The notes beneath the pieces are model-generated. The model did no database searches and was not told the DNA's origin. It saw only the letters and a program-made list of their open reading frames with translations. From NCBI RefSeq assembly GCF_002113885.1, contig NW_018408322.1, positions 250,878 to 314,877 on the forward strand: a stretch of DNA of 64,000 nt. Reading direction: 5' to 3'. The position numbers were made by a program, and so were the translations under genes. This document shows, in pieces, positions 9,786 to 62,991 of this stretch; within the stretch, counting starts at the first letter, position 1, and every line of letters begins with the position of its first letter. This stretch comes from Mizuhopecten yessoensis (lineage: Eukaryota).

Positions 9786-12700
9786 GGCAAAAAGCAGTTA
9801 CTTCCCCTCGGTCGTTAATGATTTTAAGGTTGCACAACACTAAATGAGATTGCCTCGAGACGTGCTTCTACATGTACTTATATTGTCAGTATTTCACAAA
9901 TAATAAATAAAAATAACATACCAAATGTTAATATTCATAGCATTTATTTATTTGTTTATCAAACCGTTTTCTCAATAAGAATTTAAGGACTGTAACATTT
10001 TTTTTCGTGGTTAAAATAGTTTTCTATCGAATTTACCTTAACTAAGTACCTCGCTCTGCGATATTCATAATTGATTATTTTTTCTTGTATCATTGTTTGA
10101 CACAGAGACGTATAATACATGTAGTATACGTCTCTGTTTGACAGAAGAACATAACACCCACCCACGCATCATACAGATATATCGTTCTTTTGAAAGACAT
10201 TCTTATTTTAAAGAGTTGATCTTATATCGGCCTTACCCATGAGAAAATAACAAAATGTTATACAGAACAAACTTTTAACCCCTCACGGAATACATTGCCT
10301 GCCTCTGACACTTCCAGTTTTCTAAACAGTATCTATCACACCAGGGACGTACATACGTTTAATTTAATTTAATAGTCTCCGATCACACATATCAATGTTA
10401 TAATTAAAAAAAGACTAATTCCCCTTTCTCGCTCGTTTTCATTTTTTTTTTTGCTGTTTATGTGTGTTTTGTTTGTTTGCCTTTTTATAATTTTATGAAA
10501 TAACATATTTCCTTTTCATTTGATATTTCAATGCTTAAAAGTTTTATTGCACAACCCCTGTTTAAGATTCCAGATCCGGCCCTGATAAAGCAAATTTTGT
10601 AAATTGACAGAATACACACTTATACAGACAAATTAAGAAAAAAGGCGGTTTAATTGATGACCAGGGGAAACAACTAATGAAGACGGATTATTTAATTTGT
10701 CAAGATACCATTTGTTTATTACCCAATACACACGAGCAGGAAACATATATTTCTATTAGCAAATGTCGATATAATGCCCCTCGTTTGAAGGTTGTTTTCT
10801 CGTTTTATTTAAGAATACTTTTTTACGTTTATCCGGCGTTTTTTAAAGATTTATATCTGTTTCCGTATCATTTTCCAGAGGGTAAATCGGACGAAATTGA
10901 GACATTCTACATTAAATAATGTTTTTATTGCATTTTATATCAGCATATATAATTTCTGTTTCTGAAAACACATTCAGTATGCCAGTGTAAGCAGTATTTT
11001 TTTTATAATATATATATTTTTAGATATTGATATATATTTTTAGATATTGATATATATTTTTAATATTGATATATATATTTTAATTTAGTAGATTCGCCTG
11101 CGTACCAGCGTATAGGCAGCTACTCGCCTGGGGTTTACTGTAAATTTATAACTTTTCTGTTGATCTAAGTTTTCTATTTTTCACTGTTTCTATCAAACGA
11201 GTTCGCATTAATTATATTAAAACGAAATGAAATAACGTTTATACTTATAACATAATTCTAAGTTTATATTTTCACTCATAATATATTACCACATTAAGAG
11301 CTATTGTGGACATCCCGCGAGGCACATGCGGGTGTTCCCTCCTCCAGGTGAACGAACTTTTTTACTTGAAGCGGCATTTCAGAATATTTTCCCGACTAAT
11401 CCAAGATCGAAGCTAATACGTTTCATGTAAATATTGATAAATGACAAAGTAGACAAAGGTCGATAATTGATCATGCCGAGAGCTCTGTATCCGAGTTAGC
11501 ATTATCGACAGCGATACATCAAAATAGTTCAAAAACACTATATTTCCGTGAAATACAAAGAAATCGTCTGGCACAGATGTTACAAGATATGGATTATTTA
11601 AAGAAAGTGGGTGAAAGGTCAATCTCTTTGCAAGGTACTTGCATCAGGAATATGAAAGTTGATATCTGTATCCATTCCAATGTAAAGATATAAGGCGTTG
11701 GCAAGACACAGTTTCCACTAGAGACGATATAAAGTTAATTTTATACCACAACTAGGAAGGCCGTGCTCAGAGTTTCCCCCTGAACATGAAGATCAATAAC
11801 AAAGGAAACCACCCAGAGCTATACTTACATAATTCATGTATTAAATGGGAAATATATAAATTTTGAAAGTATAAAAAAGTTTGATTTGAATTTCAAATAC
11901 TGATTCTATACTCTACGTTGCACGGATACAAGGGATGGAGATATTGCAAAGAGTTTTAAATGTCGACCTAGGGGAGGGGGATTATTTTTACCCCCGAATG
12001 TGTGAGGAAAAGTTTTTCCCCTTTGATTTACTTATTTAAGTTAAACTATCTTTGAAATCTAAAGGTTTCGTCGATCTTGATACAATATATCAAATATAAA
12101 ATAATGAGTTCGTATTTCAAGGTCCAAAGGTCAACGTCAAAGTCATAAGCTTAACAGTTGATATGTTGTCAACATGTTGATCATCATCAGTATACCGACT
12201 TAAAGGGAAGAGTTGAGTTGAGGGGCGGGGGGGGCATATATTACAGACGTTTTCTAGGTGTTTTTTTAATTTAACGTCTGTAATCAATAATAAAGTGATT
12301 TGTCATATGCATCTAACATAAACACATTAATTAGCAATGTCCTATTTTATTTGGTTTCCGAGACGATGTTTCTTTTCATGTTTCATATCAATCTGCTTTA
12401 ATTGCGTTTGAAACACTTTATAAATAAATAAATTGAGAATTATTCATACATATGCATGCGTAAATCAATTTCCTCCTATGCATAAATCAATCATCGTAAA
12501 ATGGATACATAAAGTCTGCATACATGCCATAATTTAATTCCGGCGTCCACATATAACAAACTATAGATGTATTTCCTGAAAATTTAAATTCGTTATCGGT
12601 TTTATATTGTCACAACACAAAGGCCATAGGTCAAGCTAGAGAGTCAGCGTGAAATGTATAGAAATAGAGTAACTGCGCTCAATGTTTCTGAAATTGTGAG

Positions 12701-14403: not shown

Positions 14404-17400
14404 GTAATTATATACGATGACATAAGATCCCAAACTCCAACAAACAAAATGTCCAACATGCACTCCTTTGCTCATATTAAAATGAAATAAAAACCCGTTA
14501 CCAATTCAGAAAATAGTTTGTAAAAGAATGTGCAAGAATTCACATGAAAAACTGTAAACAGCGAACTATTTGCCATGCTTTTATGATTTATGTTTTATGT
14601 ATTTTTTTCTTTGTAGAGGTTCGTGCCAAATGTGATGTATTGGAAAAAGATATTGGCGATCAAATCGGACACAATGTGAGTAAAGCAAAACGGACAGAAG
14701 TCGACTGCAGGGATCAAAGAACAGAAATGAACTCCATGAATCAACGGACAGAAGTCGACTCCTCGGACCAGCGGACAAACGCATGCTTTGAGGATCGACG
14801 AGTAAGTTTAGAGAAATAGAAGGGTTATCATACACCTAAAGCACAAGAGCCGTGATAAATAATGAAACTGAACTGATAAAAAAAAAAAAAAAAAACATAC
14901 AGAGGCAATTGTGTGTTACGTCTTTAGCACATATTTCATGATAAATACATTTTAACTCCTTACCCACCCTAGGTTTTTAACAATCAGGCAAACCATATTA
15001 TTCAAATAAATCGATAAAGTATACATATGGAGTTTTTAATGTTTACATCTACCAAAACCTACATTGTCTCGTTCATTGAGTCATGATCTAGCACAGGGGC
15101 TTGTATAGATTTATTTATTTATACAAGGTGTACTTACTGTACATGTCATGGCGGCGATAGTTGTAGGATTCCGACGAATATCTCTCTTTAAAGACTTGAT
15201 TATTATGGTAATGTATGTTGTTATTTGCATTAGAATACTTCACAGTACTCAAACATCTATTCCTGTAAAACATATTAAACAAGTAAATAAATAAAAGAAG
15301 ATATAATATAAAATAAAATAAAAAATAAATAACAACAGGAAATAGTGAAAGCATTACTTCAAGGCCATTCTTAAATCTAAAACTGACCCTTACTATTGTC
15401 AGGATAGTCTACCTATCACGTGGAATGATTTAAGTGAGAATTGACGGTTTTGCCAAAAAATGCGGGGAAATACGGAAACTGGGATTATTGCGCTAACAAT
15501 AGTGTTTTGTATTACAGCTGAGCCCTACAGCGTCGATTTGCCGACTTTCGGGGCTGCTTCAGCAGGCCCGGGACTCGGAAGGGTTGTCCCGGGACACGGA
15601 GAAGAGACAAGGACAGGGAATCTTGGTCGGGGATATGATGAACATTCTGTCTGTTGTTCGGGAAATGATCAATGACATTACCTATCAAATGTAAGTGACA
15701 GACTATTCTTACGTAAGTTTTACTCCATGATTAAAATTATAGATGAAGATTTAAAATGCAAGGTATCTATTTTATATATTTTGTGTTCGATGGCCAATTG
15801 CGAGTTCGAAAAATTTCAAAAGATTACTAGAGATTTTTCTGGAATACCTTCAATTATTTTTGGGGTTTATTCCGTATATATACTAAAACGTATTTTTATT
15901 GGTATATATCGCATTGATCAACCCCAACCCAACCCAAAATAACAGTAGTTACTGGTTGGGCTGTCTGCTATTAGGGGGATAGCCCGAATTCAATTATGTA
16001 CAATATGATGACGCACCATAAGTTCTTCACGTTACATCATTTCCACCATCGGAATCTACATGTATGTAAATTTGTTATTTTTAATTTATTTTTTTATGTT
16101 GACTCCAATTTTGATAAAAACTTACATCCTGTAAATGAATTATAAATTGTTTTGGTTGTTGATATTCATTTAATTATCTGTGGCTCTGTTTTTGTGAGAT
16201 AACTTTTCTTCTCTACAAAAAGTTACAGTTGACGTCATATCCATGGGTCACAATATCAACAATTTACAGTTGGAGTTACTCGTCATAACTACAAATCTAA
16301 GTAAGGGATTATTATATAAATATATTCAAGAGAAGCACGGCGTAGTCCTCTATATGTGTGAAACATGAATTTTATCAAAATCCGACGAATAACGACGTCG
16401 ATAATTTGATTGAAATAATTAAGTGTATTAACTTAATTAGAATGGCATCACGTGAGATACCAGATAGCACCTCACTGTATTTATCTCCGTCTGTTCATAT
16501 CGCGACTTCAAATGCTCGCAAATCAGTCATTTGAAATGCAGTATTGAAACTTAGTATTCACGAAAATTACTGCAATTCGTGATTTTTGTCGTGTATTTTA
16601 TTTTAGCAGTTCAAGGGCTGAAACAAGGGAATCACATATTCAGGTTAACATAAACTGGCTGACCCCGAACATTTCTGTAAAAATAATAATAATAATAATA
16701 ATATCTATTCAGGTAAAATAGGCATGTTATTACAAGATATCACAATTTAGAATAAAACATACAAGTAAGATCACAATGCAGCTTGTAAATAAAAAGAATA
16801 TTTTGTATTAAGACAGAATAAGAATAGATCTATCATAATAAAAGGTTTCTTAATTCAATCCTTGCCATATATCACAGAGTATAAAAATCTAAAAAAAGTC
16901 TAATACACTGTAAAAAAAAGGCAGATATTACTAGAAAATGAGACAGACTATTTTTTAGTACATGAAGGTAGATATAAATAAGTCACATAATAGGAGTGGT
17001 GTGTGCCATTTACATAAGATTACCCATAAAAGCCACAAAGTGGCTTATTTTCGATGGGGTCCAAATAACAGTAAAAATATGAAAATCAATACGGTAACGG
17101 TTCAGATAGCACAGAACAGGATATGTGTGTAACATATTAGATAATTGATCGGTAGAATTGTATTTCCATTTACATAGAAAAAATAAAACAATGTAAATAA
17201 TTATCCTCAAAATTTTATAGATTTACAGTATGTTCCCGATAGGTGGCGCTAATAGTTATATAAATTTTCTGATGTAGCCGTTAGGGTCTCGCATGTAAAA
17301 GTTCCTTGGCCGTGACAATGGACCGTTTAGGACGCCCATCCATTTTCAAAAGAAAGAGGAAGTGAACGCCATCTGTAATGTTTCGAATTGAAAACTATTT

Positions 17401-20400
17401 TCTCGTCGTTCTTTTCAGGAATTCGATGACAGCCAATGAATGCAAAACAATTGATATCGGCGTGAATACCGTGATTGATCACAGGACTACCTCTCGCATT
17501 CTGGCAAGTGATGGTGATGAGGTTGAAAAACCCGGCTCACGTCCAGAAGATGTCAAGGGCAACAAGTTGACGGAGAAATTACCGGAAATGCCAACGAGAG
17601 GTGTCGAAAGAGAATTATCCCTGGGCGTTTTAGCTTCGTTTTATTCGGCCCTCTCCCATTTTTCGAGCGAATCAAGTCTTGATATAGTAATACCTAGCAA
17701 ATCACGTGTCAGAGATGGTGACAAGGCAAAGACTTGTGTTGGTGTTGAAGACACAATTAGTGCCGGGAATTTATTTGTGTCAGAAAGTGACCATGAACAG
17801 GAAACCGGCTCTCCTTTTGGTGTCAAAGACGAAAATGTAGACTTCATGGAGTCTAAACATAAAACTGCGGACGAGCTAGGTGACCACAATTTAGAGGAAT
17901 CATGCCTTGCGAGTGTTGGTAGTCGCGGCTTGGGCCAGGGAGGTTTTGGTAGTCAAGACTCGATCCAAACAGGTGCTGGTGATAAGGACTCGGACCAAGC
18001 TCGAATAAGTCAACAACGAATGAGCCAGACATGTAATACAGGTCAAGAATCGGACCAAAAAAGCATTGGTGACCAGGAAGGTATGGTAGGTCGCGACGCG
18101 GGACAGGCAGATTTTGCAGAAAAAGAATTGGGTCATGAAGGTGGTGATGGTGGCGGCTTGAACCAAGGCGGTGTTGGTAATGGCGGCTCGGACACAGGAT
18201 GTGTTGGTGGTGGCGGCTCGGACCAAAAAGGTGGTGTTCGTAGCGACTCTGGCCAAGAAGGTGCTGGTGGTGGCAGCTTTGACCAAGAAGGTGTTGATGA
18301 TGGCGGCTCTGGTCAAGTAGGTGTCAATAATAGCGGCTCGGAACAAAGGGGTGTTGGTATTGGCGGCTCAGGCCAAGTAGGTAATGGTGGTGGCGGCTCG
18401 GACCAAGGATGTGTTGGTGATGACGGCTCGGACCAAGAACGTGTTGGTGGTGGTGGCTCGGACCAAGGAGGTGTCGGTGGTGGCGGCTCGGACCAAGGAG
18501 GTGTTGATGATGGCGGCTCGGGCAAAGAAGTTGGTGGTGGAGGCTCGGGCCAAGGAGGTGTTGGTGGTGGTGGCTCAGACCAAGGAGGTGTTGGTGGTGG
18601 CAGTTCGCACCAAGGAAGTGTTGGTGATGGCGGTTCGGGTCAAGAAGGTTTAGGTGGCGGTGGCTCTGGCCGAGAAGGTGGTGGTGGTGGTGGATCTGGC
18701 CAAGAAGATGATGGTGGTGGCGGCTCTGGCCAAGATGTTGGTGGTATCGGCTCGAACCAAGGTGGCGTAGGGGGTGACGGCTCTGGCAAAGAAGGTGCTG
18801 GTGGTGGCGGCTCTGGCAAAGAAGGTGCTGCTGGTGGTGGCTCTGGCAAAGAAGGTTTTGGTGGTATCGGCTCGGACCAAGGAGGCGTTGGTGGTGGCGG
18901 CACTGGCCAAGAAGGTGCTGGTGGTGGCGGCTCAGGCGAAGAAGTTGTTGTTGGTGGGGGCTCTGGCAAAGAAGGTGTTGGTGGTGGCGGCTCTGGCAAA
19001 GAAGGTGCTTGTGGTGGCGGCTCTGGCAAAGAAGGTGTCGATAATAGCGGCTCGGAACAAAGGGGTGTTGGTATTGGCAGCTCAGGCCAAGGAGGGTTTG
19101 GTGGTATCAGCTCGGACCAAGGAGGCGTTGGTGATGACGGCTCGGACCAAGAAGGTGTTGGTGGTGGCGGCTCGGACCAAAGAGGTGTCGGTGGTGGCGG
19201 CTCGGACCAAGGAGGGGTTGGTGATGGCGGTTCTGGTCAAGAAGGTTTAGGTGGCGGTGGCTCTGGCCAAGAAGGTGGTGGTGGTTCTGGCCAAGAAGAT
19301 GATGGTGGTGGCGGCTCTGGCCAAGAAGATGTTGGTGATATCGGCTCGGACCAAGGAGGCGTTAGAGGTGGCGGCTCTGGCAAAGAATGTGCTGGTGGTG
19401 GCGGCACTGGCCAAGAAGGTGCTGGTGGTGGCAGCTCTGGCGAAGAAGTTGTTGTTGGTGGCGGCTCTGGCCAAGAAGGTGTTGTTGGTGGCGGCTCTGG
19501 CAAAGAAGGTGCTGGTGGTGGCGGCTCTGGCAAAGAAGGTGCTGGTGGTGGCGGCTCTGGCAAAGAAGGTGTTGTTGGTGGCGGCTCTGGCAAAGAAGGT
19601 GCTGGTGGTGGCGGCTCTGGCAAAGAAGGTGCTGGTGGTGGCGGCTCTGGCAAAGAAGGTGATGCTGTTGGCGGCTCTGGCAAAGAAGGTGCTGGTGGTG
19701 GCGGCTCTGGCAAAGAAGGTGATGCTGTTGGCGGCTCTGGCAAAGAAGGTGCTGGTGGTAGCGGCTCTGGCAAAGAAGGTGCTGGTGGTGTCGGCTCTGG
19801 CCAAGAAGGTGTTGTTGGTTGCGGCCCTGGCAAAGAAGGTGCTGGTGTTGGCGGCTCTGGCAAAGAAGGTGCTGGTGGTGGCGGCTCTGGCAAAGAAGGT
19901 GATGCTGTTGGCGGCTCTGGCAAAGAAGGTGCTGGTGGTAGCGGCTCTGGCAAAGAAGGTGCTGGTGGTGTCGGCTCTGGCCAAGAAGGTGTTGTTGGTT
20001 GCGGCCCTGGCAAAGAAGGTGCTGGTGTTGGCGGCTCTGGCAAAGAAGGTGCTGGTGGTGGCGGCTCTGGCAAAGAAGGTGATGCTGTTGGCGGCTCTGG
20101 CAAAGAAGGTGCTGGTGGTAGCGGCTCTGGCAAAGAAGGTGCTGGTGGTGTCGGCTCTGGCCAAGAAGGTGTTGTTGGTTGCGGCCCTGGCAAAGAAGGT
20201 GCTGGTGTTGGCGGCTCTGGCAAAGAAGGTGCTGGTGGTGGCGGCTCTGGCAAAGAAGGTGATGCTGTTGGCGGCTCTGGCAAAGAAGGTGCTGGTGGTA
20301 GCGGCTCTGGCAAAGAAGGTGCTGGTGGTGTCGGCTCTGGCCAAGAAGGTGTTGTTGGTTGCGGCTCTGGTAAAGAAGGTGCTGGTGGTAGCGGCTCTAG

Positions 20401-21199
20401 CCCAGAAGGTGCTGGTGGTGGTGGCTCCGGCCAAGAAGGTGTTGTTGGTGGCGGCTCCGGCCAAGAAGGTGTTGTTGGTGGCGGCTCTGGCCAAGAAGGT
20501 GTTGTTAGTGGCGGCTCTGGCCAAGAAGGTGTTATTGGTGGCGGCTCTGGCAAAGAAGGTGATGCTTGTGGCGGCTCTGGCCAAGCAAGTGTTGGTAGTA
20601 TTGGCTCGGACCAAGGTGGCGTTGATGGTAGCGGCTCGGACCAAGGAGGTGATGGTGGCGGTGGCTCTGGCTTTGATGATTCATTTGCAACATATGATGA
20701 AGAAACAAAGGAAGAGCAAGGATCGATTATGTTAAATGGACAGAACCCATGTTCAGACGATTCCCATAGAAAAGGGCGGGATAATGATATTCGAGATTCA
20801 CCGAAACAAAATTTCAAGTCATCTTCTCTTGGTTCTGAATGTGACGCAAGCAAAGAAACAGGAAGTGCATCAAACGGCAAGCGTGGGAAACGTCTTCTTC
20901 CTCGGCCTTCTCACTCAGACACGTCCGTGTGTACGGGGAAACGACGACGACTCAAGAGTATTTTATCAGACGGAAAAGACAAAATGAGAAATGGTGGTAA
21001 ACGGAAGTCACAAACGAACGCGCAATCAAAGAAGTCATCAGGTGGACAAGGCTTAGGCAGAAGATTGATACAAGCCACGTGCGCCGTGGTGTCAGTCGCG
21101 GGGTTAATGGGTGCAATGGTTCAGGGCCCCTCGGGGTGTCCATGGCCCCCTGCCTTGGTGGAAGATATGTCAAGGATAATTGATCTGGACTACTTATAA
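13899..21199 (+). CDS. Uncharacterised ~1547-aa glycine-rich repeat protein; join(13899-14403, 14617-14801, 15518-15690, 17419-21199)
   Basis: Four stop-free exons with GT-AG boundaries and phases 1,0,2 join to 4644 nt (1548 codons). The ATG is in acaATGg context (an in-frame ATG also lies at 13893). The terminal exon is the 1273-aa ORF. Confidence 0.75.
14617..14801 (+). CDS. Gly-rich protein exon 2 (contains three 9-aa QRTEVDxxD-like repeats)
   Basis: tttgtag acceptor, CGA|gtaagt donor; phase matches exon 1. Confidence 0.7.
15518..15690 (+). CDS. Gly-rich protein exon 3 (LSPTASICRLSGLLQQ...MINDITYQ)
   Basis: ttacag acceptor, AT|gtaagt donor; open in the required frame. Confidence 0.68.
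17419..21199 (+). CDS. Gly-rich protein terminal exon (decapeptide array, basic region, hydrophobic tail)
   Basis: ttttcag acceptor at 17418; 3.8-kb open frame ending TAA at 21199. Confidence 0.8.
18140..20670 (+). repeat. Coding 30-bp minisatellite (ggctctggcaaagaaggtgctggtggtggc) with 180-bp higher-order repeat
   Basis: Roughly 80 decapeptide units; 60-nt lines recur identically every 180 nt from 19681 to ~20365. Confidence 0.95.
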
Positions 21200-50885: not shown

Positions 50886-52709
50886 TTACAAATAGTCTTT
50901 ATTGGCTGTATACGGGGAGAGGGGTAGGTCGTGTTGGCAGAAAAGTACAAAATAACGGTTTAGGGAAGGTAACCCTTCCTTTATAGTCCTCAAGAAGAGG
51001 GTAAGAGCAAACAGATATGAAGTTTGTACTCCCTTTTTCATAAGTCCAAGGTCTGTCACTGGCTAGTATTTGCTTCAATGCCATGATAATTTAGCGACCT
51101 ACAAATGTCGCTTTTCTATCGGACTAATTACAAATGTCCTGTAGAGACACACAGGTGCCTTTTTGCTGCCTCCGGCTCATTATTGTTTTAAATATCAGAT
51201 TGATAATTTTTCAATTTATGCATTTCCCGTTTAATAATATAACTGTTCTATGAGCTCCTGTTGAGGTGTCTTGATAATGAGCAGTTTGGTCCGAAACAAA
51301 TTGACAACCTTCTATTGTCTACACTGTTGCATTTACTAGTATTTCCTTGTACTTATTACAATTCATTTAGAAGACTAATATATTTACAAATTATGGAGAC
51401 TTGAATTCTGAACAAACGTGTTTGAGAAACTCTTTTACTGTATATCAAAATATTGAAATGCTCTAATACTGACATTTTGGAAATCGATGAAAATAACTTT
51501 GAAAAATACTCACAAAATATCATCTTTATACAGGAACAAATGGCCATGGCTGGAGGCGTATCTGTGATTGTGAGTTAAGCAGCAGGGAAATCTGTTGTAG
51601 AAACGAGGGCCATGAACGAAGCTTAACGTACCTTCAACTGAAACCAAATAATGAATATCTGTTAGTCATTATCTGTTTTTCATCAACATAGGAAGATTAG
51701 GATCAAAAGAATGACCTAAATGGAAAAACCATCGTCATCAAACGTGGCGCCCTGTTATATTTTAGTTATGGGAGATATGGACGCTAAAGTTAGTGTGAAC
51801 ACTACTTATATTGAGGATGTGAAAGGACAATAAGGTGTTGGGTTCTGAAACAATAAGGGTGAAGGAATGATGGATTATTATGCATTACAGACTGGTTATA
51901 GGAGGCATAACAGTTCCTTATATTGAGTTAAATATATTAACATGGACCTGTCCAAATAGGAAAGTGAAAAATGGGATAAACAACATGATAAGTCGTAAAT
52001 GGGGAATATCACTGCAGGATTTAGTCTGCGAAGAGGGTCGCATTTTACCTATACTAGATATTGGAAACAGGTAAATCGTGGGCGGACAAAATTGAAGGTC
52101 GTTTGACATAAAAAATAAATAAATAAAAGGAAGTTCTGTGTAGAGAGGAGGAGCAGGTTTACAATATTAGGATGCTGTAAAAAAAGAAAATTTGACGAGT
52201 GGAAATGTTCACGTTGACACTGATATTTGTGCTATATATATGTAATAAAAAAATTTTTTATAAGTATTTGCATATGATATTTTCGCACTTATTTACTCGC
52301 TTAAAAAAAAAAAAAATTTACACACCGCATACATTTCCAGTATTTGGGAACGAGAATGGATGAACCGTGGGGAAACATCAGTAGTGCTTATTCTGGCATG
52401 AGTGTGTATTTGACAAATCTGGGACATTGTTGAGGACAGGAAATAGTGAAACAACAGCTGCAACACACAGGAACAAAACGGATCAATGCTAACGTAGTTT
52501 CAGAACTTAACGGAAGTAAAAGTAAGCGCAAGGGTTGTCCCAAAAAAACCGACGCATAAAGATGGCAGAAATAGCTTCATAAAGAGGGATCTTGAAGATT
52601 CTACATACATTCACCAGACAGCTATGTGTGGGAAAATACTTCAAGTATTAAGTATCAAGGACAAAAATGAAAAACATCAAGCTAACAAAATAGAAAGAAA
52701 GGAACGGTT

Positions 52710-52950: not shown

Positions 52951-53448
52951 TCATTTCTGGTAACCTACCTGTATCTAAAGCGTAATACCAAAAGCGTGAC
53001 TATATATAATTTACCTAACTGTTGTTTTGCAAACATGCGACATTATCTGTAACTCGAATGCACGTATTTCAAACCAGGCGTTGACTTTAGAGGCTATCTT
53101 AGCTGACCTGTACATGTATATTTAAACCTTTTCTCACGCCCAATATTGTTTTCCGTGAGCAACTTGTTACCGTATCAATAACCGACTCGTCTGACAACGG
53201 CAACTTACCTCGGCACAAATGCATTTTATAACACCAATGTTGCGTGGTATGTATTTCAGCTACATATCATGTACACACGAGTAGACCGGCAGATAAATTA
53301 GAACACAATGTAACAGTTTTATATGCAGGTCTACACGAGTCAAGGTTGATCACGTTTATCTTTTACAATCCGTAACTATTTAATCTAGTTTGTCACCTCA
53401 GCCGCCTGAGAAACGTACGTCTGTTTTAGTCGTTCCAACAAATGCACA

Positions 53449-54729
53449 ATGAGCAGATCATTCCCTCGAATCAAAGCTGTCCGAGCGTACGTAACGGAAG
53501 CCAAAGAGGGAGACCAAGGAGTGGACTGTCATGACGTGAACGATAAACATTGGATCAATGGCTTCCCCACGCCAATGGCAAACCCAATGTCTGTGTATCC
53601 ACAGTACACAGTATTATGGAAGTCATGGGGAATCAACGCTCTTGGCACTATGGTTGCTGAAGTTGAGGCTGAAAACGGCGAATGCGGGGTTGGAATCACC
53701 ATCGGAGGAGAACCCGGATGTTACATTGTGGAGAAGCACCTGAGTCGGTTTGTAGAAGGTCAAGATCCGCGAAATGTGGAGTTGATGTGGGACCAAATGT
53801 TCCGTGCCACCCTCAACTATGGCCGGAAGGGATTGGCAATCCATGCCATCAGCGCCGTAGACCTGGCCATTTGGGATTTATTAGGCAAACTCCGCGGGGA
53901 ACCGGTTTATGCAATGCTAGGTGGTAAAGTGAAGGAGCGACTTCCGGTTTATTGTACAACGGCACGTCCCGACATTGCTAAGAATATGGGATTTGCCGCC
54001 TCAAAAATCACTTGTCCCTATGGTCCGGCTGATGGAGAGGAAGGGTTCAAGAAAAATGTTGAATTCTATAAAGGATGGCGCGAAAAGGTTGGTCCTGACT
54101 TTCCACTGATGCTGGACTGTTACATGGCCTTGACCCCACAATATACCGTGAGGCTAGCCAAGGCGCTCGAACCTCTCGGTCTCAAGTGGATCGAGGATTA
54201 TCTTCCTCCTGACGATTATGAAGGATACGAAGACGTACGGAAAGCCATGTTTGGATCAAAGGTCTTACTTACCACTGGAGAACACGAGTACAGTCGTTAT
54301 GGATACCAGCTTCTTTTGAAATCCCGATGTGTGGACATTTTACAGCCAGATATATCCATGTTGGGCGGGATCACTGAGGCTCGTCGATTGGTTGCCATGG
54401 CATCCGCTCACAATGTCATGGTTATACCACATGCCTCTAGTATTTATTCCTACCATCTACAATACGCCTTCTGTAATTGTCCAGTAGCAGAATTCATAGA
54501 TATGAGCCCCGAGGCTGACAGGATCGTGCCATATTTCGGAGGGCTGTTTCTTGACGAACCCCTTCCCGTCAACGGTTTTATTGACCTTCCGGATAAACCC
54601 GGGTTTGGCGTGACTTTGTGTAAGGATACACTAAGAAGGCCTTATCATAGGAGTGAGGACACAAGTCGTGAACAAGCGGAGTTAAACATAAATTTCAAAC
54701 CTTCCGAAAAAGCATTTATGCCCTTTTAG
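53449..54729 (+). CDS. rhmD: L-rhamnonate dehydratase-like (mandelate racemase subgroup, enolase superfamily), divergent paralog, intronless
   Basis: 426 aa; RhmD/LRA3 signatures GINALGT, YIVEKHL, MLDCYM (D223), KWIE (E249), TGEHE (E278), QPD (D301), IPH (H328), DKPGFGV; AATAAA at 54876. Confidence 0.9.
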   Translation: MSRSFPRIKAVRAYVTEAKEGDQGVDCHDVNDKHWINGFPTPMANPMSVYPQYTVLWKSWGINALGTMVAEVEAENGECGVGITIGGEPGCYIVEKHLSRFVEGQDPRNVELMWDQMFRATLNYGRKGLAIHAISAVDLAIWDLLGKLRGEPVYAMLGGKVKERLPVYCTTARPDIAKNMGFAASKITCPYGPADGEEGFKKNVEFYKGWREKVGPDFPLMLDCYMALTPQYTVRLAKALEPLGLKWIEDYLPPDDYEGYEDVRKAMFGSKVLLTTGEHEYSRYGYQLLLKSRCVDILQPDISMLGGITEARRLVAMASAHNVMVIPHASSIYSYHLQYAFCNCPVAEFIDMSPEADRIVPYFGGLFLDEPLPVNGFIDLPDKPGFGVTLCKDTLRRPYHRSEDTSREQAELNINFKPSEKAFMPF

Positions 54730-55351
54730 CTCCAATTTTCGTGATTTGTTAATAGCTCCAATTTTTATGATTTGGTACATTGGACATGAGAAGAGAGAAG
54801 TTGTACCTAGAAGCTTTGTGTGGACAGGGAATCATGAACGAATCCCTTTTTTCAGTGTTGAAAGGAGGGGGTGTAAATAAAGTTCTAGCCTATTGGACTT
54901 TTCCTTTTAGCACCCCTGGATTTACTTCAGGAAGTGATTATCTCAATCTTGTGCTCATTTTTCTAGGCTTTGAATCCAATTAAGGGGAATAGACATTGGA
55001 AAATATCTCATTAAAAGTGTCTCGTTAAGTGTTTGTAAAACTCTTCGCAAAAATAAAACATTACATCTGTTTGAAGATGTTTCTCATTTTTTCTGTTTTC
55101 CTGTTACAACAGGGACCTGAGATTTAAGACACATTATACATTGTGATATCTCTTCTACTCGGTGTGGAGTATTATTAGATATTTTTCGGGTCTAAAAAAT
55201 CTCCAAAATACAAACTGTGTCTTAATTGGTATGTCCTTGTACCTGTTACGTTTTCAGACGTCACAACTTCAAGTCATCGGGATGTTTGCTCAGTTACAAG
55301 ATTGCAGATATGACGTTCATCTAGTAACAGGTATTGTATGTTTAGTTATCT

Positions 55352-55545
55352 GGACCGCGATCGCCGATGGGTTAAGGCGACTGACATTCTGCTACCAGTA
55401 GCCCTCCACCACTGTGTCGCGGTTTTGATATCAACGTGGGGCGATCGCCAGGTCCTGGCCGCAGGTCGGTGATTTTTCTCCGTGTACCCCGGCTTTCCTC
55501 CACCATCAAAACTTAGCACGTCTTTAAATGACTATAGCTATTGGT
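55352..55545 (+). mobile_element. tRNA-derived V-type SINE
   Basis: Head gaccgcgatcgccgatgggttaaggcg; core ttttctccgtgtaccccggctttcctccacc; same position in the duplicated flank as the copy at 60076. Confidence 0.7.
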
Positions 55546-55811
55546 GGTGGGGATATGTAAGCTGTATCCTAGTCATTGACTGTTTTTCATCAACAAACGA
55601 AGATAAAGATCAGAATGAGCGTCTTAATGGAAATCTTGCATCAAAATTGGTGTCCTGTTAGAAATGAGAGATATGAACGCTATAGTAAGTGTGAACAATA
55701 CTGGTGTAGAAGATATGAAAGGGCAGTAAGGTGCTGGAGTATGAAACAATAACGGTGAACGCCTGATGCATTTCTGTATATGCATAACAGTCTGGTAAAA
55801 ACAGGCATAAC

Positions 55812-57400
55812 GTTATATAAATACTACATTCCTGAGTGTGTGACAGTGCCTATGATCACTCCGAGGGTATCACTGTCACCAGAGGCGACCCTAGGCACTG
55901 TCACACTCTAATGAATGTAGTGTTGTTTTTTTTATTATACCCAAAGTCAATAGTTAATAAAGTTTTTATATTTGTAACAAATATTGTATTTTCATCAACA
56001 AATATAACAGTAAACTATTCAAGATTTAACAATACAGTTAGTGCTATTAACACTGCGAAATGTCATGGCCGTTATCATAATTTAATTGTTGATATTGACG
56101 ATCGGGTTACCGAACATCTTCTTCGTATCATCATCAGTGATGGTGTCCTTGTGTTTCACTCCCCCGAAACCTTGTTTTTTCATATCAATCACAACTGCTT
56201 CGTACGTGTTCGTTTGACGCTTTGATAATTTATCCGTCAATAGTTTATGAAGTCTCACTCATTTCAGTAGTCTCGTTCAACCAGACGCTTGATCACTTGT
56301 AATTCAAGAGTAGTCTCGTTCAACCAGACGCTTGGTCACTTGTAATTCAAGAGTAGTCTCGTTCAAGCAGACGCTTGCTCACTTGTAATTCATGAGTCTG
56401 GTCAAACACAGTACTTTAAAATTACCATCACCAGAGGGCAGTGTTTTTACTTTCGTTTCCGGACGTTATGTCAACGCAATTAAATTTCAATGAATAATGA
56501 AATTAATGAAAAAAATTACCTATACATGCATTCCTGAAGTACCCGTGTATTCACTTTTATCGAGAACAATGTAAGAAAATGTGTCAAATCTCCAGAATAA
56601 TGCCATATATTTCCATTAAATAAGTCATAATGTAACTAGGTACAAAGCCAACAAGGCTGACTGAAGTGGGAAAAAAGCATGCAAAGCCAGTGAGATTTTA
56701 CCTGTACACCATTCAAATCACCTTCAAGTTCTCACTCAGGTAATCTGGCTTGACTTGTATCAATAGCCTTGTTAGCTTCATGAATTTTTGTAAAATATCC
56801 AATGAAAATACATGAAATCATTATTTTTTAAGCATTTTCTTACATTTTTCTCGTTGATAGTGAAAACATGGATACTTCAGGAATGCATATACAGGTAATT
56901 TTTTAATGAATTAAAATATTTAATGTAATTTTGGGCCACTCAAATTCTGACTTCAAAAGTTAAAAAAGGTGTGTCAATGATTTTTTTTACCAGAATCTCG
57001 GTAAGCCTCGTTATGATGTCACAAAACGAAAGCACTGCGTTTGACCAGACTCTCTATTCGGCGTAGCTTGCGCAGGCAACAGGAGTCTGGCTGAACGAGA
57101 CTATATTCGGCGTTACACCGTGGTACTAATCACCGGCGAGTAATACGCGGTAGCGACATGAAGTGCCTGTGGGCCTACATGTGCGATGAATCGCAATGCA
57201 AAAAATATTGCGGCTGAAACGAACCGTGCACGCATCTTCTTTGCGTGGTCACTATTTACACTGTCACACACACTGTCACCCGTTGCTAGAGCGTTTGGAA
57301 TCACCCTTCCATCGACTCAATGTCAAAGCGAGTGTGACAGTGTGAAATGAACAATTTGTTTCTACCAATCAGATTACATGAATTTCATTAGAGGTATGAT
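55812..57400. mobile_element. ~1.6-kb composite insertion interrupting a duplicated flank
   Basis: Homology to 51650-52000 stops at ggcataac (55811) and resumes at aattccatatattg (~57401). Confidence 0.6.
56268..57103. mobile_element. Nested palindromic MITE with TAG-starting TIRs and a triplicated 43-bp left end
   Basis: tagtctcgttcaaccagac at 56268, 56311 and 56354; inverted gtctggctgaacgagacta ending at 57103; inner inverted arms 56393-56416/57030-57053 and ~56503-56580/56834-56910. Confidence 0.75.
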
Positions 57401-57545
57401 AATTCCATATATTGAATTTCAAGCATTAACATGGACCTGCCAAAATAGAAACACAAAAAACGGAGTGAAAAATGGGATACACAGGATTCTGTATAAAGTC
57501 ACCATGCTGCTATGTGTGGGAAAATACTTCAAGCATCAAGGACAN

Positions 57546-57587
<42 letters not shown>

Positions 57588-59161
57588 GAAGGAACGTTTT
57601 ATTTTAGTTGACGTAAATAAATGTACCAGAAGTTGGGAGTGATCAATATCCAAAGGTCATTAAAATTAAAACAACATAAAAACCAAGTTGATAACAAGAT
57701 CTGGTATCTCTCAGACAGAAATGATGAAGGAGGCAGGAAGTAAATGTAGATGTGCTACACAATCATCTTCATCATCGTCGTCGTCGTCATCGTTGTCGTG
57801 ATCATCAACCAACGCTGATTAAGATCAGAAGGAGTGCCTTAATGGAACAATTTCATCAAGCATGACGCCCTGTTCCTCGTTCGTTATGGGAGATATGGAC
57901 GCTACAGTTAGTGTGAACAATACTAATGTTGAGGATGTGAAAGGGTATTAGGTAAGGGGGTCTGAAAAAATAACGGTGAACGACTGATTGATTTCTATAT
58001 ACATAACAGTCTGGTTAAAGCAGGCATAACATTTCCTTATATGGAGTTCATACATCAACATGGACCTACCCAAACAGAAAAGTGAACAAAGGGATACACC
58101 ACATCATGCTAGATCGTAAAGGTCACTGCAGAATGTAGGCTGCCAAAAGAGTCGCATTTTACCTAGTAGTTGGAAAAAGGTGAAATATGGGCGGACAAAA
58201 ACAGAATAAGATAGAAGGGCGTTTGACATTAAACAAAAAGAAATGAAAAGGAACTTCTTTGCAAGCGGACAAAAACAGAATAAGAAAGAAAGCCGTTTGA
58301 CATTAAACAAAAAGAAATGAAAAGCAACTTCTGTGCAGAGAGGAGAAACAGGTTACCAACATAAAGAGACTGTAAAGGTATACATTTTTGCGTGTTCGCA
58401 TTGCAAATCTTTAAACTGTTCATGATGTTGAATGTTTTGCGTTTACAATTTATATATATTTATCATGTATATCTATAATCTAAATAATATATTAATAAAT
58501 ATTCGCATGTTGGTATTTTCGCGCTAATTTTTTCAACGCTTAAAACGCCAATATTTTCACACTGCGAACATTTCACCTTTTATAAGCATTTAAGAAGGAG
58601 CATCGACATCGACTGTAATAAAATAGAGAAACAACAGACGGAGTGAGTTGGCTGCAGTCACATTGAGATGAAACTTATCAGAGGTGACATGATGTCAGAT
58701 CTCCCAAAGGGACACAAGTGAAAGCAAAGTGCAAGCATTGCTCCAAAGCCACACATCCAAAGAAGGCTGCAGTAGCTTCATAAAGAGGGACAACAGGATT
58801 CTACATAAAGTCACGTGACAGCTGTGTATTAGAACATATTTAAGGTTCAAGCATCAAAGACAAAAATGAAACCATCATGCAAACAAAAATAGATGGAAGG
58901 AACGTTTAAGACAGTTTAATAAAAAGAAGACCCTAATAATATGACAAAAGTTGCAAGTGATCAATATCCAGAGGACATTAACAATTGGAAAGTTTAAAGA
59001 CCAACCAAACAACATGATCTGGTAACTGCCAAACATAAATGATGCAGGAGAAAGAAGAAGAAAGTCATCATCATCACCGTCGTCGTCGTCCTCCTCGTCC
59101 TCCTCCTCGTCGTGCTCCTCCTCCCTCCTCCTCCTCCTCCTCCTCCTCCTCCTCCTCCTCG

Positions 59162-59562
59162 TCAAATATTGCTTACTACTGGAGAACACGAGTACAGTCG
59201 TTATGGATACCAGCTTCTATTGAAATCCCGATGTGTGGACATTTTACAACCAGATATATCCTGGCTGGGCGGGATCACCGAAGTTCGTCGTATGATTGCC
59301 ATGGCATCCGCTCACAATGTCATGGTCATACCACATGGTTCTAGTATCTATTCCTACCATCTACAATACGCCTTCTGTAATTGTCCAGTAACCCCTTCCC
59401 GCCAATGGTTTTATTGACCTTCCGGATAAACCAGGATTTGGCGTGACTTTGTGTAAGGATACACTAAGAAGGCCTTATCATAGGAGTGAGGACGCAAGTC
59501 GTAAACAGGTGGAGTTTAACATTAACTTTAAACCTCCTGAAAAAGCATTTATGCCATTCTAG
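59162..59562 (+). pseudogene. rhmD: 5'-truncated L-rhamnonate dehydratase pseudogene with a 71-bp internal deletion
   Basis: Matches the CDS from LLTTGEHE to the stop codon. Sequence equivalent to 62749-62819 is missing (ccagta|accccttccc), which causes a frameshift. The 5' end is fused to a (TCC)n tract. Confidence 0.92.
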
Positions 59563-61645: not shown

Positions 61646-61710
61646 TAGATACATCCAATCTAGTTTGCTACCTCAGTTGCTGAAGAAACACCCCTTCTAT
61701 CGCATGCGCC

Positions 61711-62991
61711 ATGAGTAGATCATTCCCTAGAATCAAAGCTGTCCGAGCGTACGTAACGGAAGCAAAAGAGGGGGACCAAGGAGCGGACTGTCATGACGTG
61801 GACGATAAGCACTGGATCAACGGCTACCCGAACCCCGTTGCCAACCCTATGTCCGTGTATCCACAGTACGCGTCATTCCGGAAGTCATGGGGAATCAACG
61901 CTCTTGGCACTATGGTTGTTGAAGTTGAGGCTGAAAACGGCGAGTGTGGGGTTGGAATCACCATCGGGGGAGAACCCGGATGTTACATTGTAGAGAAGCA
62001 CCTGAGTCGGTTTGTAGAAGGTCAAGATCCGCGAAATGTGGAACTGATGTGGGACCAAATGTTCCGTGCCACACTCAACTACGGACGGAAGGGACTTCCA
62101 ATCCAAGCCATCAGCGCCGTAGATCTAGCCATTTGGGATTTATTAGGCAAACTCCGCGGGGAACCTGTTTATGCAATGCTAGGCGGAAAAGTGAAGGAGC
62201 GACTTCCGGTTTACTGTACAACGGCACGTCCCGATATTGCTCAGAAATTGGGATTTGTCGCATCAAAAATCCCTTGTCCTTATGGTCCGACGGCCGGAGA
62301 GGAAGGGTTCAAGAAAAATGTTGAATTCTTCAAAGGATGGCGCGAGAAGGTTGGTCCTGATTTCCCACTCATGCTGGATTGTTACATGGCCTTGACCCCA
62401 CAATATACGGTAAGGCTAGCCAAGGCGCTTGAACCTCTTGGTCTGAAGTGGATCGAGGAATTTCTTCCTCCTGACGATTATGAAGGATACGAAGACGTGC
62501 GGAAAGCCATGTTTGGATCAAAGGTCTTACTTACCACTGGAGAACACGAATACAGTCGTTATGGGTACCAGCTTCTTTTGAAATCCCGATGTGTGGACAT
62601 TTTACAGCCAGATATATCCTGGCTGGGCGGGATCACCGAGGCTCGCCGTATGGTTGCCATGGCATCCGCTCACAATGTCATGGTCATACCACATGGTTCA
62701 AGTATCTATTCCTACCATCTACAATACGCCTTCTGTAATTGTCCAGTAGCAGAATTTATCAATTTGAGTCCCGAGGCTGACAAGATCGTGCCGTATTTCG
62801 GAGGGTTGTTTCCTGACGAACCCCTTCCCGCCAACGGTTTTATTGACCTTCCGGATAAACCCGGATTTGGCGTGACTTTGTGTAAGGATATACTAAGAAG
62901 GCCTTACCAGAGGAGTGAAGACGCAAGTCGTAAACAGGCGGAATTAAACATTAACTTTAAACCTCCTGAAAAAGCGTGCATGCCATTCTAG
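61711..62991 (+). CDS. rhmD: L-rhamnonate dehydratase-like, canonical paralog, intronless
   Basis: 426 aa; retains H34, R57, D223, E249, E278, D301, H328 and E348, equivalent to the substrate, Mg2+ and acid-base residues of E. coli RhmD (YfaW); also close to fungal LRA3/LGD1. Confidence 0.93.
   Translation: MSRSFPRIKAVRAYVTEAKEGDQGADCHDVDDKHWINGYPNPVANPMSVYPQYASFRKSWGINALGTMVVEVEAENGECGVGITIGGEPGCYIVEKHLSRFVEGQDPRNVELMWDQMFRATLNYGRKGLPIQAISAVDLAIWDLLGKLRGEPVYAMLGGKVKERLPVYCTTARPDIAQKLGFVASKIPCPYGPTAGEEGFKKNVEFFKGWREKVGPDFPLMLDCYMALTPQYTVRLAKALEPLGLKWIEEFLPPDDYEGYEDVRKAMFGSKVLLTTGEHEYSRYGYQLLLKSRCVDILQPDISWLGGITEARRMVAMASAHNVMVIPHGSSIYSYHLQYAFCNCPVAEFINLSPEADKIVPYFGGLFPDEPLPANGFIDLPDKPGFGVTLCKDILRRPYQRSEDASRKQAELNINFKPPEKACMPF

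What the first reader, a model, noticed from the sequence alone, without database searches (positions are those of the whole stretch)
53449..54729. Paralog with substitutions concentrated at the substrate pocket: candidate neofunctionalised dehydratase
Seen: by manual count the two copies differ at ~36 of 426 residues. The 53449 copy keeps all Mg2+ ligands (D223, E249, E278) and the His-Asp dyad (H328, D301). It changes the conserved capping-loop Arg (ASFR57 to TVLW57), GADCHD to GVDCHD, KIP to KIT, WIEEF to WIEDY, QPDISW to QPDISM, PHG to PHA and EFINL to EFIDM. Established: in this superfamily, specificity is set by the capping-domain loops and barrel-end residues; RhmD uses an N-terminal His and Arg to bind substrate. 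Inference: catalysis is retained with altered sugar-acid specificity rather than random decay.
Basis: partly seen in the sequence, partly recalled or inferred. Interest (0 to 1): 0.7.

Follow-up and report, generated by a model that had tools for sequence, protein, structure and literature searches.

The report
Fast-evolving duplicate rhamnonate dehydratase in scallop
A scallop genome carries a young, expressed and still selectively maintained extra copy of a sugar-acid dehydratase gene that has changed several otherwise invariant residues around its active site, including a substrate-binding arginine. A new function is plausible, but the evidence does not distinguish adaptation from partly relaxed constraint.

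Summary
The two intact single-exon ORFs (A at 53449-54729, C at 61711-62991) differ at exactly 36 of 426 residues, and every named substitution is present.

What the tools add:
- **Which copy changed.** Three other scallop genomes have one copy each. Against them, 32 states are derived in A and 7 in C. C sits next to the same downstream Melibiase_2 gene as the single copies.
- **Rate.** A evolves about 11 times faster at the protein level (omega 0.36 against 0.033, p ~5e-13), but omega is below 1 (p ~0.015).
- **Still constrained.**
  - The ORF has no stop codon (about 0.3% chance under neutrality) and no indel.
  - Its replacements are conservative and avoid conserved sites.
  - It is transcribed as an unspliced mRNA of about 1.6 kb.
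- **Invariant residues hit.** A replaces R57 (Arg59 of Salmonella RhmD), Q132, E250, W304, G329 and N351.
- **Pocket claim.** Enrichment near functional residues is significant only by sequence-based proxies, and the capping loop 54-57 drives most of it. No 3D coordinates were available.
- **Positive selection.** A branch-site test found none (omega2 = 1.00). About a third of sites look relaxed.
- **Catalytic residues.** Their retention is expected by chance.

Verdict: a real, functional, asymmetrically diverging paralogue. Altered specificity is the best guess, not a demonstrated fact. A third, dead fragment lies at 59163-59559.

The parts
53449..54729 (+). Copy A: the derived, fast-evolving RhmD-like paralogue (426 aa, single exon)
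   Evidence: Intact ORF. Pfam MR_MLE_N and MR_MLE_C. NCBIfam RhmD equivalog 500.6 bits against a cut-off of 393. 32 derived residues. Omega 0.36. AF2 model pLDDT 92.7, TM 0.90/0.97 to 2oz3.
53419..55044 (+). Unspliced transcript of copy A as assembled in a public run (about 30 nt of 5' UTR, the CDS, about 315 nt of 3' UTR ending at an AATAAA)
   Evidence: one contig of 1,627 nt covers exactly this span with 2 mismatches and no joints. Stranded RNA-seq runs X23 and X24 give reads over 53410-54861, all with the first mate on the minus strand. AATAAA is seen.
53382..53413 (+). Upstream motif (AATCTAGTTTG..ACCTCAG..GAAAC) shared with copy C and with the single-copy genes of three other scallops; a candidate 5' UTR or core-promoter element
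   Evidence: Read directly and aligned. It lies inside the 5' UTR of the Argopecten transcript contig L003.
61711..62991 (+). Copy C: the conservative positional orthologue (426 aa, single exon)
   Evidence: 94-95% identical to the Pecten maximus, Argopecten irradians and Ylistrum balloti proteins. Omega 0.03, the same as background. A Melibiase_2 gene follows downstream on the same strand, as in the other scallops.
61657..61689 (+). The same upstream motif in front of copy C
59163..59559 (+). Fragment B: a dead third copy covering codons about 271-347 and 371-426. It is 5'-truncated and has lost 70 nt (codons 348-370).
   Evidence: It keeps the ancestral residue at all seven sites it covers where A is clearly derived (304, 314, 329, 374, 405, 408, 419). 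At codon 400 it shares A's His codon. Its flanks are homologous to A's flanks at 75-78% identity.

Best explanation
Copy A is a young tandem duplicate of the scallop's single ancestral L-rhamnonate-dehydratase-like gene. That gene belongs to the enolase superfamily, mandelate racemase subgroup. Among the four scallop genomes compared, the duplicate is found only in this one.

Shown:
- The duplication took the proximal upstream region with it.
- A is the copy that changed (32 derived residues against 7 in C).
- A is transcribed as an unspliced mRNA.
- A has been held under purifying selection at roughly two thirds of its sites, while about a third evolve near-neutrally.

Inferred:
- The protein still folds as an RhmD-type barrel.
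- It still binds Mg2+ through D223, E249 and E278.
- It still abstracts the alpha-proton of an acid sugar with the H328-D301 dyad.
- The part of the site that holds the distal end of the substrate has been rebuilt. The changes are R57W with the whole 54-57 loop, A25V next to H28, W304M, G329A, E250D/F251Y, N351D/L352M and P188T.
- A therefore most likely dehydrates L-rhamnonate poorly and prefers a different, or less polar, acid sugar.

Whether this shift was driven by selection or simply permitted by redundancy is not resolved.
For: - Identity and fold.
- Single copy within +-10 kb and conserved synteny with Melibiase_2 in three other scallops. One high-identity protein per species in the protein collection.
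- Only A, C and fragment B exist in this genome.
- Polarity 32:7, binomial p 7e-5.
- dS between A and C is 0.33, against 1.0-2.3 between species.
- Omega on A is 0.36 against 0.033 background (2dl about 52, p ~5e-13); omega on C is 0.03; omega on A is below 1 with p ~0.015.
- The chance of escaping a stop codon under neutrality is about 0.3%. There is no indel in 1,281 nt, against at least 2 in each flank of about 110 nt. Replacements are conservative (mean BLOSUM62 +0.28 against -0.49, p 0.005).
- A's changes are under-represented at conserved sites (5/32 against 10.2 expected). Yet they hit sites that are at least 97% invariant in 122 homologues from sponges to molluscs: R57, Q132, E250, W304, G329 and N351. 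Background scallop lineages hit none of these (0/39).
- Enrichment near functional residues and on the barrel's catalytic face.
- Expression and independent confirmation of the sequence.
Against: - The branch-site test finds no class with omega above 1. The data fit plain relaxation at about 34% of sites.
- The pocket enrichment rests on windows chosen after seeing the data, and mostly on one four-residue patch. Barrel windows alone are not significant.
- No 3D distances could be computed, because the tools give no coordinates.
- Expression in three raw RNA-seq runs is very low or absent (0, about 6 and about 8 reads per 11-13 million reads).
- Loss of the substrate-binding Arg could simply cripple the enzyme.
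- The locus already holds one dead copy (B), so birth and death of copies is ongoing.
- The roles of Arg59 and His33 come from my memory of the RhmD literature. The paper was not available.
Confidence: 0.45

Rival explanations
1. Relaxed constraint through redundancy. A still catalyses the same L-rhamnonate dehydration, probably less efficiently. Copy C covers the need, so constraint on A's fine-tuned active-site shell has loosened and slightly deleterious changes have accumulated there. No new function has arisen.
For: The branch-site model puts 34% of sites at omega about 1.0 with no excess over 1. An omega of 0.36 is in the range I recall for young duplicates (from memory, not checked here). 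Many changes are conservative, or are states seen in confirmed RhmDs: PHA in Gibberella, and M180, D195, L368 and V374 in bacterial or fungal enzymes. Expression is low. A sibling copy is already dead.
Against: R57W removes a residue conserved in 99% of 122 homologues and in all four solved RhmDs. That is hard to reconcile with unchanged substrate binding. W304M needed two nucleotide changes at an invariant site. Changes cluster near functional residues, whereas the other scallop lineages avoid those regions (2/39).
Confidence: 0.3
2. Catalytically compromised subunit. A has lost useful substrate binding but is kept because it co-assembles with C, or serves some non-catalytic role. Solved RhmD entries carry up to 8 or more chains, which suggests oligomers. 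Fold and interface residues would stay constrained while the pocket drifts.
For: About two thirds of sites remain strongly constrained (omega0 = 0.017) while changes concentrate near the pocket. Several solved RhmD entries contain 8 to 16 chains.
Against: All metal ligands, the His-Asp dyad, H28 and E348 are intact, although that is weak evidence. Nothing here shows co-expression or co-assembly.
Confidence: 0.1
3. Pseudogene in waiting. A was released from all selection recently and has simply not yet been hit by a disabling mutation.
For: It has a dead sibling, low expression, and lies within a region of repeats.
Against: An intact ORF is unlikely under sustained neutrality (0.08-1.4% over plausible branch lengths). 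There are no indels, and replacements are non-random in type and in position. Omega is below 1.
Confidence: 0.07
4. Artefact. A and C are two alleles, or a collapsed or expanded assembly error, and not two loci.
For: Scallop genomes are highly heterozygous (from memory, not checked here).
Against: A dS of 0.33 is far above allelic divergence. Both copies lie 8.3 kb apart on one scaffold with different flanks and a third fragment between them. Runs from 6 studies hold A's words.
Confidence: 0.02

Closest known systems
L-rhamnonate dehydratase RhmD/YfaW of Salmonella typhimurium and E. coli (PDB 2p3z, 3cxo, 3d46, 2i5q; NCBIfam NF011968)
   Same: Alignment over about 400 residues at E about 1e-111. 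The two-domain enolase-superfamily fold is shared. The Mg ligands, the His-Asp dyad, and the His33 and Glu349 equivalents are conserved.
   Different: Copy A has Trp where these enzymes have Arg59. It also differs at the Trp three residues after the dyad Asp (W304M). It is an animal nuclear gene, and no activity has been measured.
RhmD from Azotobacter vinelandii (2oz3/3ekg) and from the fungus Gibberella zeae (3fxg/2p0i)
   Same: These are the best sequence and structure matches: E 4e-133, TM 0.90/0.97, rmsd 1.4 A. The fungal enzyme naturally has PHA, as copy A does.
   Different: Both keep the Arg59 equivalent, the WIEE/WWEE motif and the conserved Trp, all of which A has changed.
Copy C of the same locus and the 'L-rhamnonate dehydratase-like' proteins of Pecten maximus, Argopecten irradians and Ylistrum balloti
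   Same: Same length, single exon, 88-92% identical to A, same upstream motif and same genomic neighbourhood.
   Different: These evolve at omega about 0.03 and keep all family-invariant residues. A carries 32 derived states at omega 0.36.

Membership tests
Enolase superfamily, mandelate racemase subgroup | N-terminal capping domain plus C-terminal (beta/alpha)-barrel domain (Pfam MR_MLE_N and MR_MLE_C) | tested here: met
   PF02746 E 1.6e-9 and PF13378 E 1.2e-43 for A; a confident AF2 model superposes on RhmD structures.
Enolase superfamily, mandelate racemase subgroup | Three carboxylate Mg2+ ligands at the ends of barrel strands 3, 4 and 5, and a His-Asp dyad at the ends of strands 7 and 6 | tested here: met
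   D223, E249, E278, H328 and D301 are present in A. They are invariant in the 63-sequence alignment and sit at the strand ends of the model. Retention is also expected by chance given only 32 changes.
L-rhamnonate dehydratase (RhmD) equivalog, NCBIfam NF011968 | Whole-protein score above the curated cut-off of 393 bits | tested here: met
   A scores 500.6 bits and C scores 515.3 bits, over profile positions 3-394 of 395.
L-rhamnonate dehydratase (RhmD), isofunctional family | Capping-domain substrate-binding residues His33 and Arg59 (Salmonella numbering; their role is recalled from the RhmD literature and was not checked here) | tested here: not met
   H28 (His33 equivalent) is kept. The Arg59 equivalent is Trp in A (R57W, CGG to TGG). 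Arg is present in C, in 99% of 122 homologues and in all four solved RhmDs. A is therefore an RhmD homologue by descent but is not filed as an isofunctional RhmD.
L-rhamnonate dehydratase (RhmD), isofunctional family | Dehydration of L-rhamnonate to 2-keto-3-deoxy-L-rhamnonate | not testable with these tools
   Needs an enzyme assay. None is known for any animal member (no such paper among those listed).

The most novel reading that the evidence does not exclude
Copy A is an animal acid-sugar dehydratase with a genuinely new substrate specificity. It would have been created within one scallop lineage by rebuilding the distal substrate-binding site while keeping the catalytic core: Arg to Trp in the capping loop, together with W304M, G329A, E250D and N351D. 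That would make it a natural, datable example of specificity switching in the enolase superfamily inside a metazoan.
Probability: 0.3. Interest if true: 0.55.

Novelty: new variant of a known kind. Interest (0 to 1): 0.35.

Why it matters
The enolase superfamily is a standard model for how new enzyme specificities arise on a fixed catalytic scaffold, and nearly all characterised cases are microbial. This locus offers a very recent pair in an animal: a conservative parent, a diverged daughter and a dead sibling. The ancestral state is known at every site and only 32 changes need to be tested. If A has a different substrate, the few invariant-site changes (R57W first) would pinpoint the specificity determinants of the RhmD family. 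It would also hint at which algal or bacterial sugar acids a filter-feeding scallop metabolises. If A proves merely weakened, this is an ordinary case of asymmetric relaxation after duplication.

Tried and rejected
- **RhmD structure paper.** Rakus et al. 2008 (PMC2562705, PMID 18754693) is not held. Three further literature searches found no residue-level description. The roles of Arg59 and His33 therefore rest on my memory plus the conservation measured here.
- **3D mapping.** Structure prediction returns no coordinates to the script machine.
- **Branch-site test for positive selection.** No signal.
- **Frameshift pair as the cause of the 54-57 patch.** Rejected. The frame is unchanged and there are six separate point differences in 12 nt.
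- **Retrocopy or CDS-only copy.** BLAST homology between A and C stops 7 nt before the ATG and 22 nt after the stop, which suggested this. It was rejected because a conserved upstream motif and recognisable 3' UTR blocks are shared, so the flanks have simply diverged with indels.
- **Donor for gene conversion.** No other paralogue exists in the genome.
- **A-type orthologue in another species.** None appears between 92% and 82% identity in the protein collection, and the 90% clusters contain only C-type proteins. All runs that hold A's words carry the same species label.
- **Partner aldolase.** A search with PF03328 gave one uninformative exon-sized hit.
- **tRNA scan and Pfam scans of small neighbouring ORFs.** Nothing found.
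- **A against C expression.** Not compared, because only one read-laying run was allowed and the two copies lie more than 6 kb apart.

Full report
**Where this is**

The window is AT-rich (about 35% GC) and poor in long ORFs, so it is eukaryotic. The best protein matches to the ORF at 61711 are 'L-rhamnonate dehydratase-like' proteins of the scallops Pecten maximus (95%) and Argopecten irradians (94%). Other molluscs, a brachiopod, annelids, sponges and choanoflagellates follow. The assembly has 987.6 Mb in 82,659 contigs. From memory that matches the Yesso scallop assembly, but I did not verify it. The genome is certainly a pectinid other than the three species compared below.

**The observation**

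- Copy A (53449-54729) and copy C (61711-62991) are both intact 426-codon ORFs on the + strand.
- They share 390/426 residues without gaps, so they differ at 36 positions.
- Both carry MR_MLE_N and MR_MLE_C domains.
- Both pass the NCBIfam L-rhamnonate dehydratase equivalog cut-off of 393 bits (A 500.6, C 515.3).
- Counting residues in the HMMER alignments to solved RhmD chains gives these equivalences to Salmonella numbering:
  - H28 = His33 and R57 = Arg59;
  - D223, E249 and E278 = Asp226, Glu252 and Glu280;
  - D301 = Asp302, H328 = His329 and E348 = Glu349.
- An AlphaFold model of A built on 63 homologues is confident (pLDDT 92.7). It superposes on the Azotobacter RhmD 2oz3 with TM 0.90/0.97 and rmsd 1.4 A.

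**The locus**

- The whole genome holds only A, C and a fragment B at 59163-59559.
- B covers codons about 271-347 and 371-426. It has lost 70 nt and its 5' half, so it is dead.
- In Pecten maximus, Argopecten irradians and Ylistrum balloti there is one single-exon 426-aa gene within +-10 kb. A Melibiase_2 gene follows 3.5-5.3 kb downstream on the same strand.
- In this genome the Melibiase_2 exons begin about 6.8 kb downstream of C. C is therefore the positional orthologue, and A and B are additions upstream of it.
- BLAST similarity between A and C stops just outside the CDS. However, both copies share an upstream motif with each other and with the other scallops (53382-53413 and 61657-61689), and they share blocks of 3' UTR. 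This was a DNA duplication whose non-coding flanks have since diverged, with at least two indels per 110 nt or so.

**Which copy changed**

- With the three outgroup species, 32 of A's states are absent from all outgroups, against 7 of C's. The binomial p is 7e-5.
- Fragment B keeps the ancestral residue at all seven sites it covers where A is clearly derived (304, 314, 329, 374, 405, 408, 419; at codon 400 it shares A's His codon). Those changes therefore arose on the A lineage alone.

**Selection**

- Nei-Gojobori counts give dS 0.326, dN 0.041 and omega 0.127 between A and C. Between scallop species dS is 1.0-2.3 and omega is 0.016-0.033. The duplication is therefore much younger than the species splits.
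- I wrote a GY94-F3x4 maximum-likelihood codon model for five taxa and ran it on three topologies. Background omega is 0.033, omega on A is 0.36 (2dl about 52, p ~5e-13), and omega on C is 0.03 (not different from background). Omega on A is below 1 with 2dl about 6 and p ~0.015.
- A branch-site model A with A as foreground gives omega2 = 1.00 and 2dl = 0. About 34% of sites move from omega 0.017 to about 1 on that branch. There is thus no statistical sign of positive selection. The test has little power on one short branch, and the code is my own, not PAML.

**Evidence that A is maintained**

- Simulated neutral evolution over the A branch leaves the ORF free of stop codons in only 0.08-1.4% of runs (0.3% at K = 0.135).
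- The 1,281-nt CDS has no indel while its flanks have several.
- A's replacements are more conservative than random single-nucleotide replacements (mean BLOSUM62 +0.28 against -0.49, p 0.005).
- A's changes are under-represented at conserved positions (5/32 at sites at least 97% conserved, against 10.2 expected).

**Expression**

- 18 runs from 6 studies hold at least half of A's sampled words.
- In run X1, a 1,627-nt contig spans exactly 53419-55044, ending at an AATAAA. It has two mismatches and no joints.
- A contig bounded like an mRNA, in an assembly of only about 80 Mb for a 1-Gb genome, is best read as a transcript. That reading is my inference, because the run's type is only guessed as RNA.
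- Two stranded RNA-seq runs give sparse reads over 53410-54861, all with the first mate on the minus strand, as expected for + strand RNA. A third run gives none. Expression is real but low in those samples.
- One of the two contig differences turns H400 into Q, the state of copy C (54648 T>G).

**Where the changes fall**

- Among 122 homologues, A has replaced residues that are 97-100% invariant: R57W, Q132H, E250D, W304M, G329A and N351D. It has also replaced sites that are about 90% conserved: P188T, L352M, P130A, A25V, V70A and V183A.
- The other four scallop lineages together changed none of the sites that are at least 97% conserved (0/39).
- Compared with the four solved RhmDs, only R57, E250, W304 and P188 are universally conserved. 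G329A is natural in the fungal enzyme, and positions 351-352 and 132 vary among confirmed RhmDs.
- Proxy test 1: 11 of 32 derived sites lie within +-3 residues of the eight functional residues. The expectation is 4.2 (p 0.001), and background lineages give 2/39. Six of those eleven are in the two capping-loop windows. The barrel windows alone give 5 against 3.2 expected (p 0.2).
- Proxy test 2: using the model's secondary structure, 8 of 14 barrel substitutions lie on the catalytic face (strand ends plus the following loops). The expectation is 4.4 (p 0.04). Against the background lineages Fisher's p is 0.09.
- Changes are also clustered in sequence, with 7 adjacent pairs against 2.3 expected (p 0.005). 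At the nucleotide level there are dense patches, such as 6 changes in the 12 nt of codons 54-57 and 3 changes in 4 nt at codons 304-305. This could reflect multi-nucleotide mutation, local co-adaptation or selection.
- All windows were defined after I had seen the data, and no true 3D test was possible.

**Reading**

A is a real, young, expressed and selectively maintained paralogue that has diverged asymmetrically. It keeps the catalytic core, but with 32 changes over 426 sites that is expected by chance about two times in three, so it says little. It has lost the Arg that, to my recollection of the RhmD literature, binds the substrate, and several invariant neighbours of catalytic residues have changed.

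The most economical mechanism is an Mg2+-dependent acid-sugar dehydratase with a remodelled distal binding site. That implies a changed, or at least weakened, substrate preference. The codon models cannot separate adaptive remodelling from relaxation permitted by redundancy, and the dead sibling B shows that copies at this locus do get lost. I therefore give altered specificity about 0.45, simple relaxation about 0.3, and the other readings the rest.

**Comparison with what is known**

By descent, A belongs to the RhmD clade of the mandelate racemase subgroup. Because the Arg59 equivalent is not met, I do not file it as an isofunctional RhmD. The gene is present in public annotation. I found no paper on animal RhmD-like genes among those listed, though one search was a loose search. 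The family's spread across molluscs, annelids, brachiopods, sponges and choanoflagellates argues that it is old in this lineage and not a recent bacterial import. That question belongs to a separate finding on the same locus.

Noticed in passing
window 59163-59559 (+), with 59101-59160 just upstream: A dead third copy (fragment B) of the dehydratase gene. It is 5'-truncated and has lost 70 nt (codons 348-370). A CTC/CCT low-complexity run lies directly upstream. Its flanks match A's flanks at 75-78% identity, yet its coding part is closer to C (95%) than to A (92%).
   Followed up: partly
window 53382-53413 and 61657-61689; L001, L002 and L008 about 40-75 nt upstream of the ATG at 10001: A conserved motif (roughly CCAGTTTGCCACCTCAG) lies in the 5' UTR or proximal promoter of the gene in all four scallop species and in both copies here. 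Further upstream, a GCTATCTCA motif sits near the 5' end of the Argopecten transcript contig L003. That second motif has degenerated in copy A.
   Followed up: partly
window 55381-55414: A segment of about 34 nt is covered at very high depth (contig depths 115-1100) in every run, with loose ends on both sides. It looks like part of an abundant repeat or SINE-like transcript. ARAGORN finds no tRNA there.
   Followed up: partly
window 54645 and 54648: An independent transcript contig differs from the reference at two third-codon positions of copy A. One is synonymous (Y399). The other changes H400 to Q, the state of copy C. This is either a polymorphism or a tiny conversion tract.
   Followed up: no
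window 51663-52140, 55570-55811, 57391-57599, 57802-58261: Dispersed repeats at 64-86% identity flank copies A and B. They may be transposon remnants that mediated the tandem duplications. No Pfam domain was found in the small ORFs tested nearby.
   Followed up: partly
window 53449-54729 against 61711-62991, nucleotide level: Differences come in dense patches: 6 in 12 nt at codons 54-57, 3 in 4 nt at codons 304-305, and 4 in 6 nt at codons 194-195. Derived amino-acid sites form 7 adjacent pairs against 2.3 expected. Multi-nucleotide mutation events are a possible cause and would bias codon-model tests.
   Followed up: partly
window 17378-21199 (+): A 1,273-aa ORF lies in a GC-rich island with strong GC skew (59% GC against about 35% around it). 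Many overlapping ORFs occur on both strands, which suggests a repetitive coding sequence. I did not examine it.
   Followed up: no
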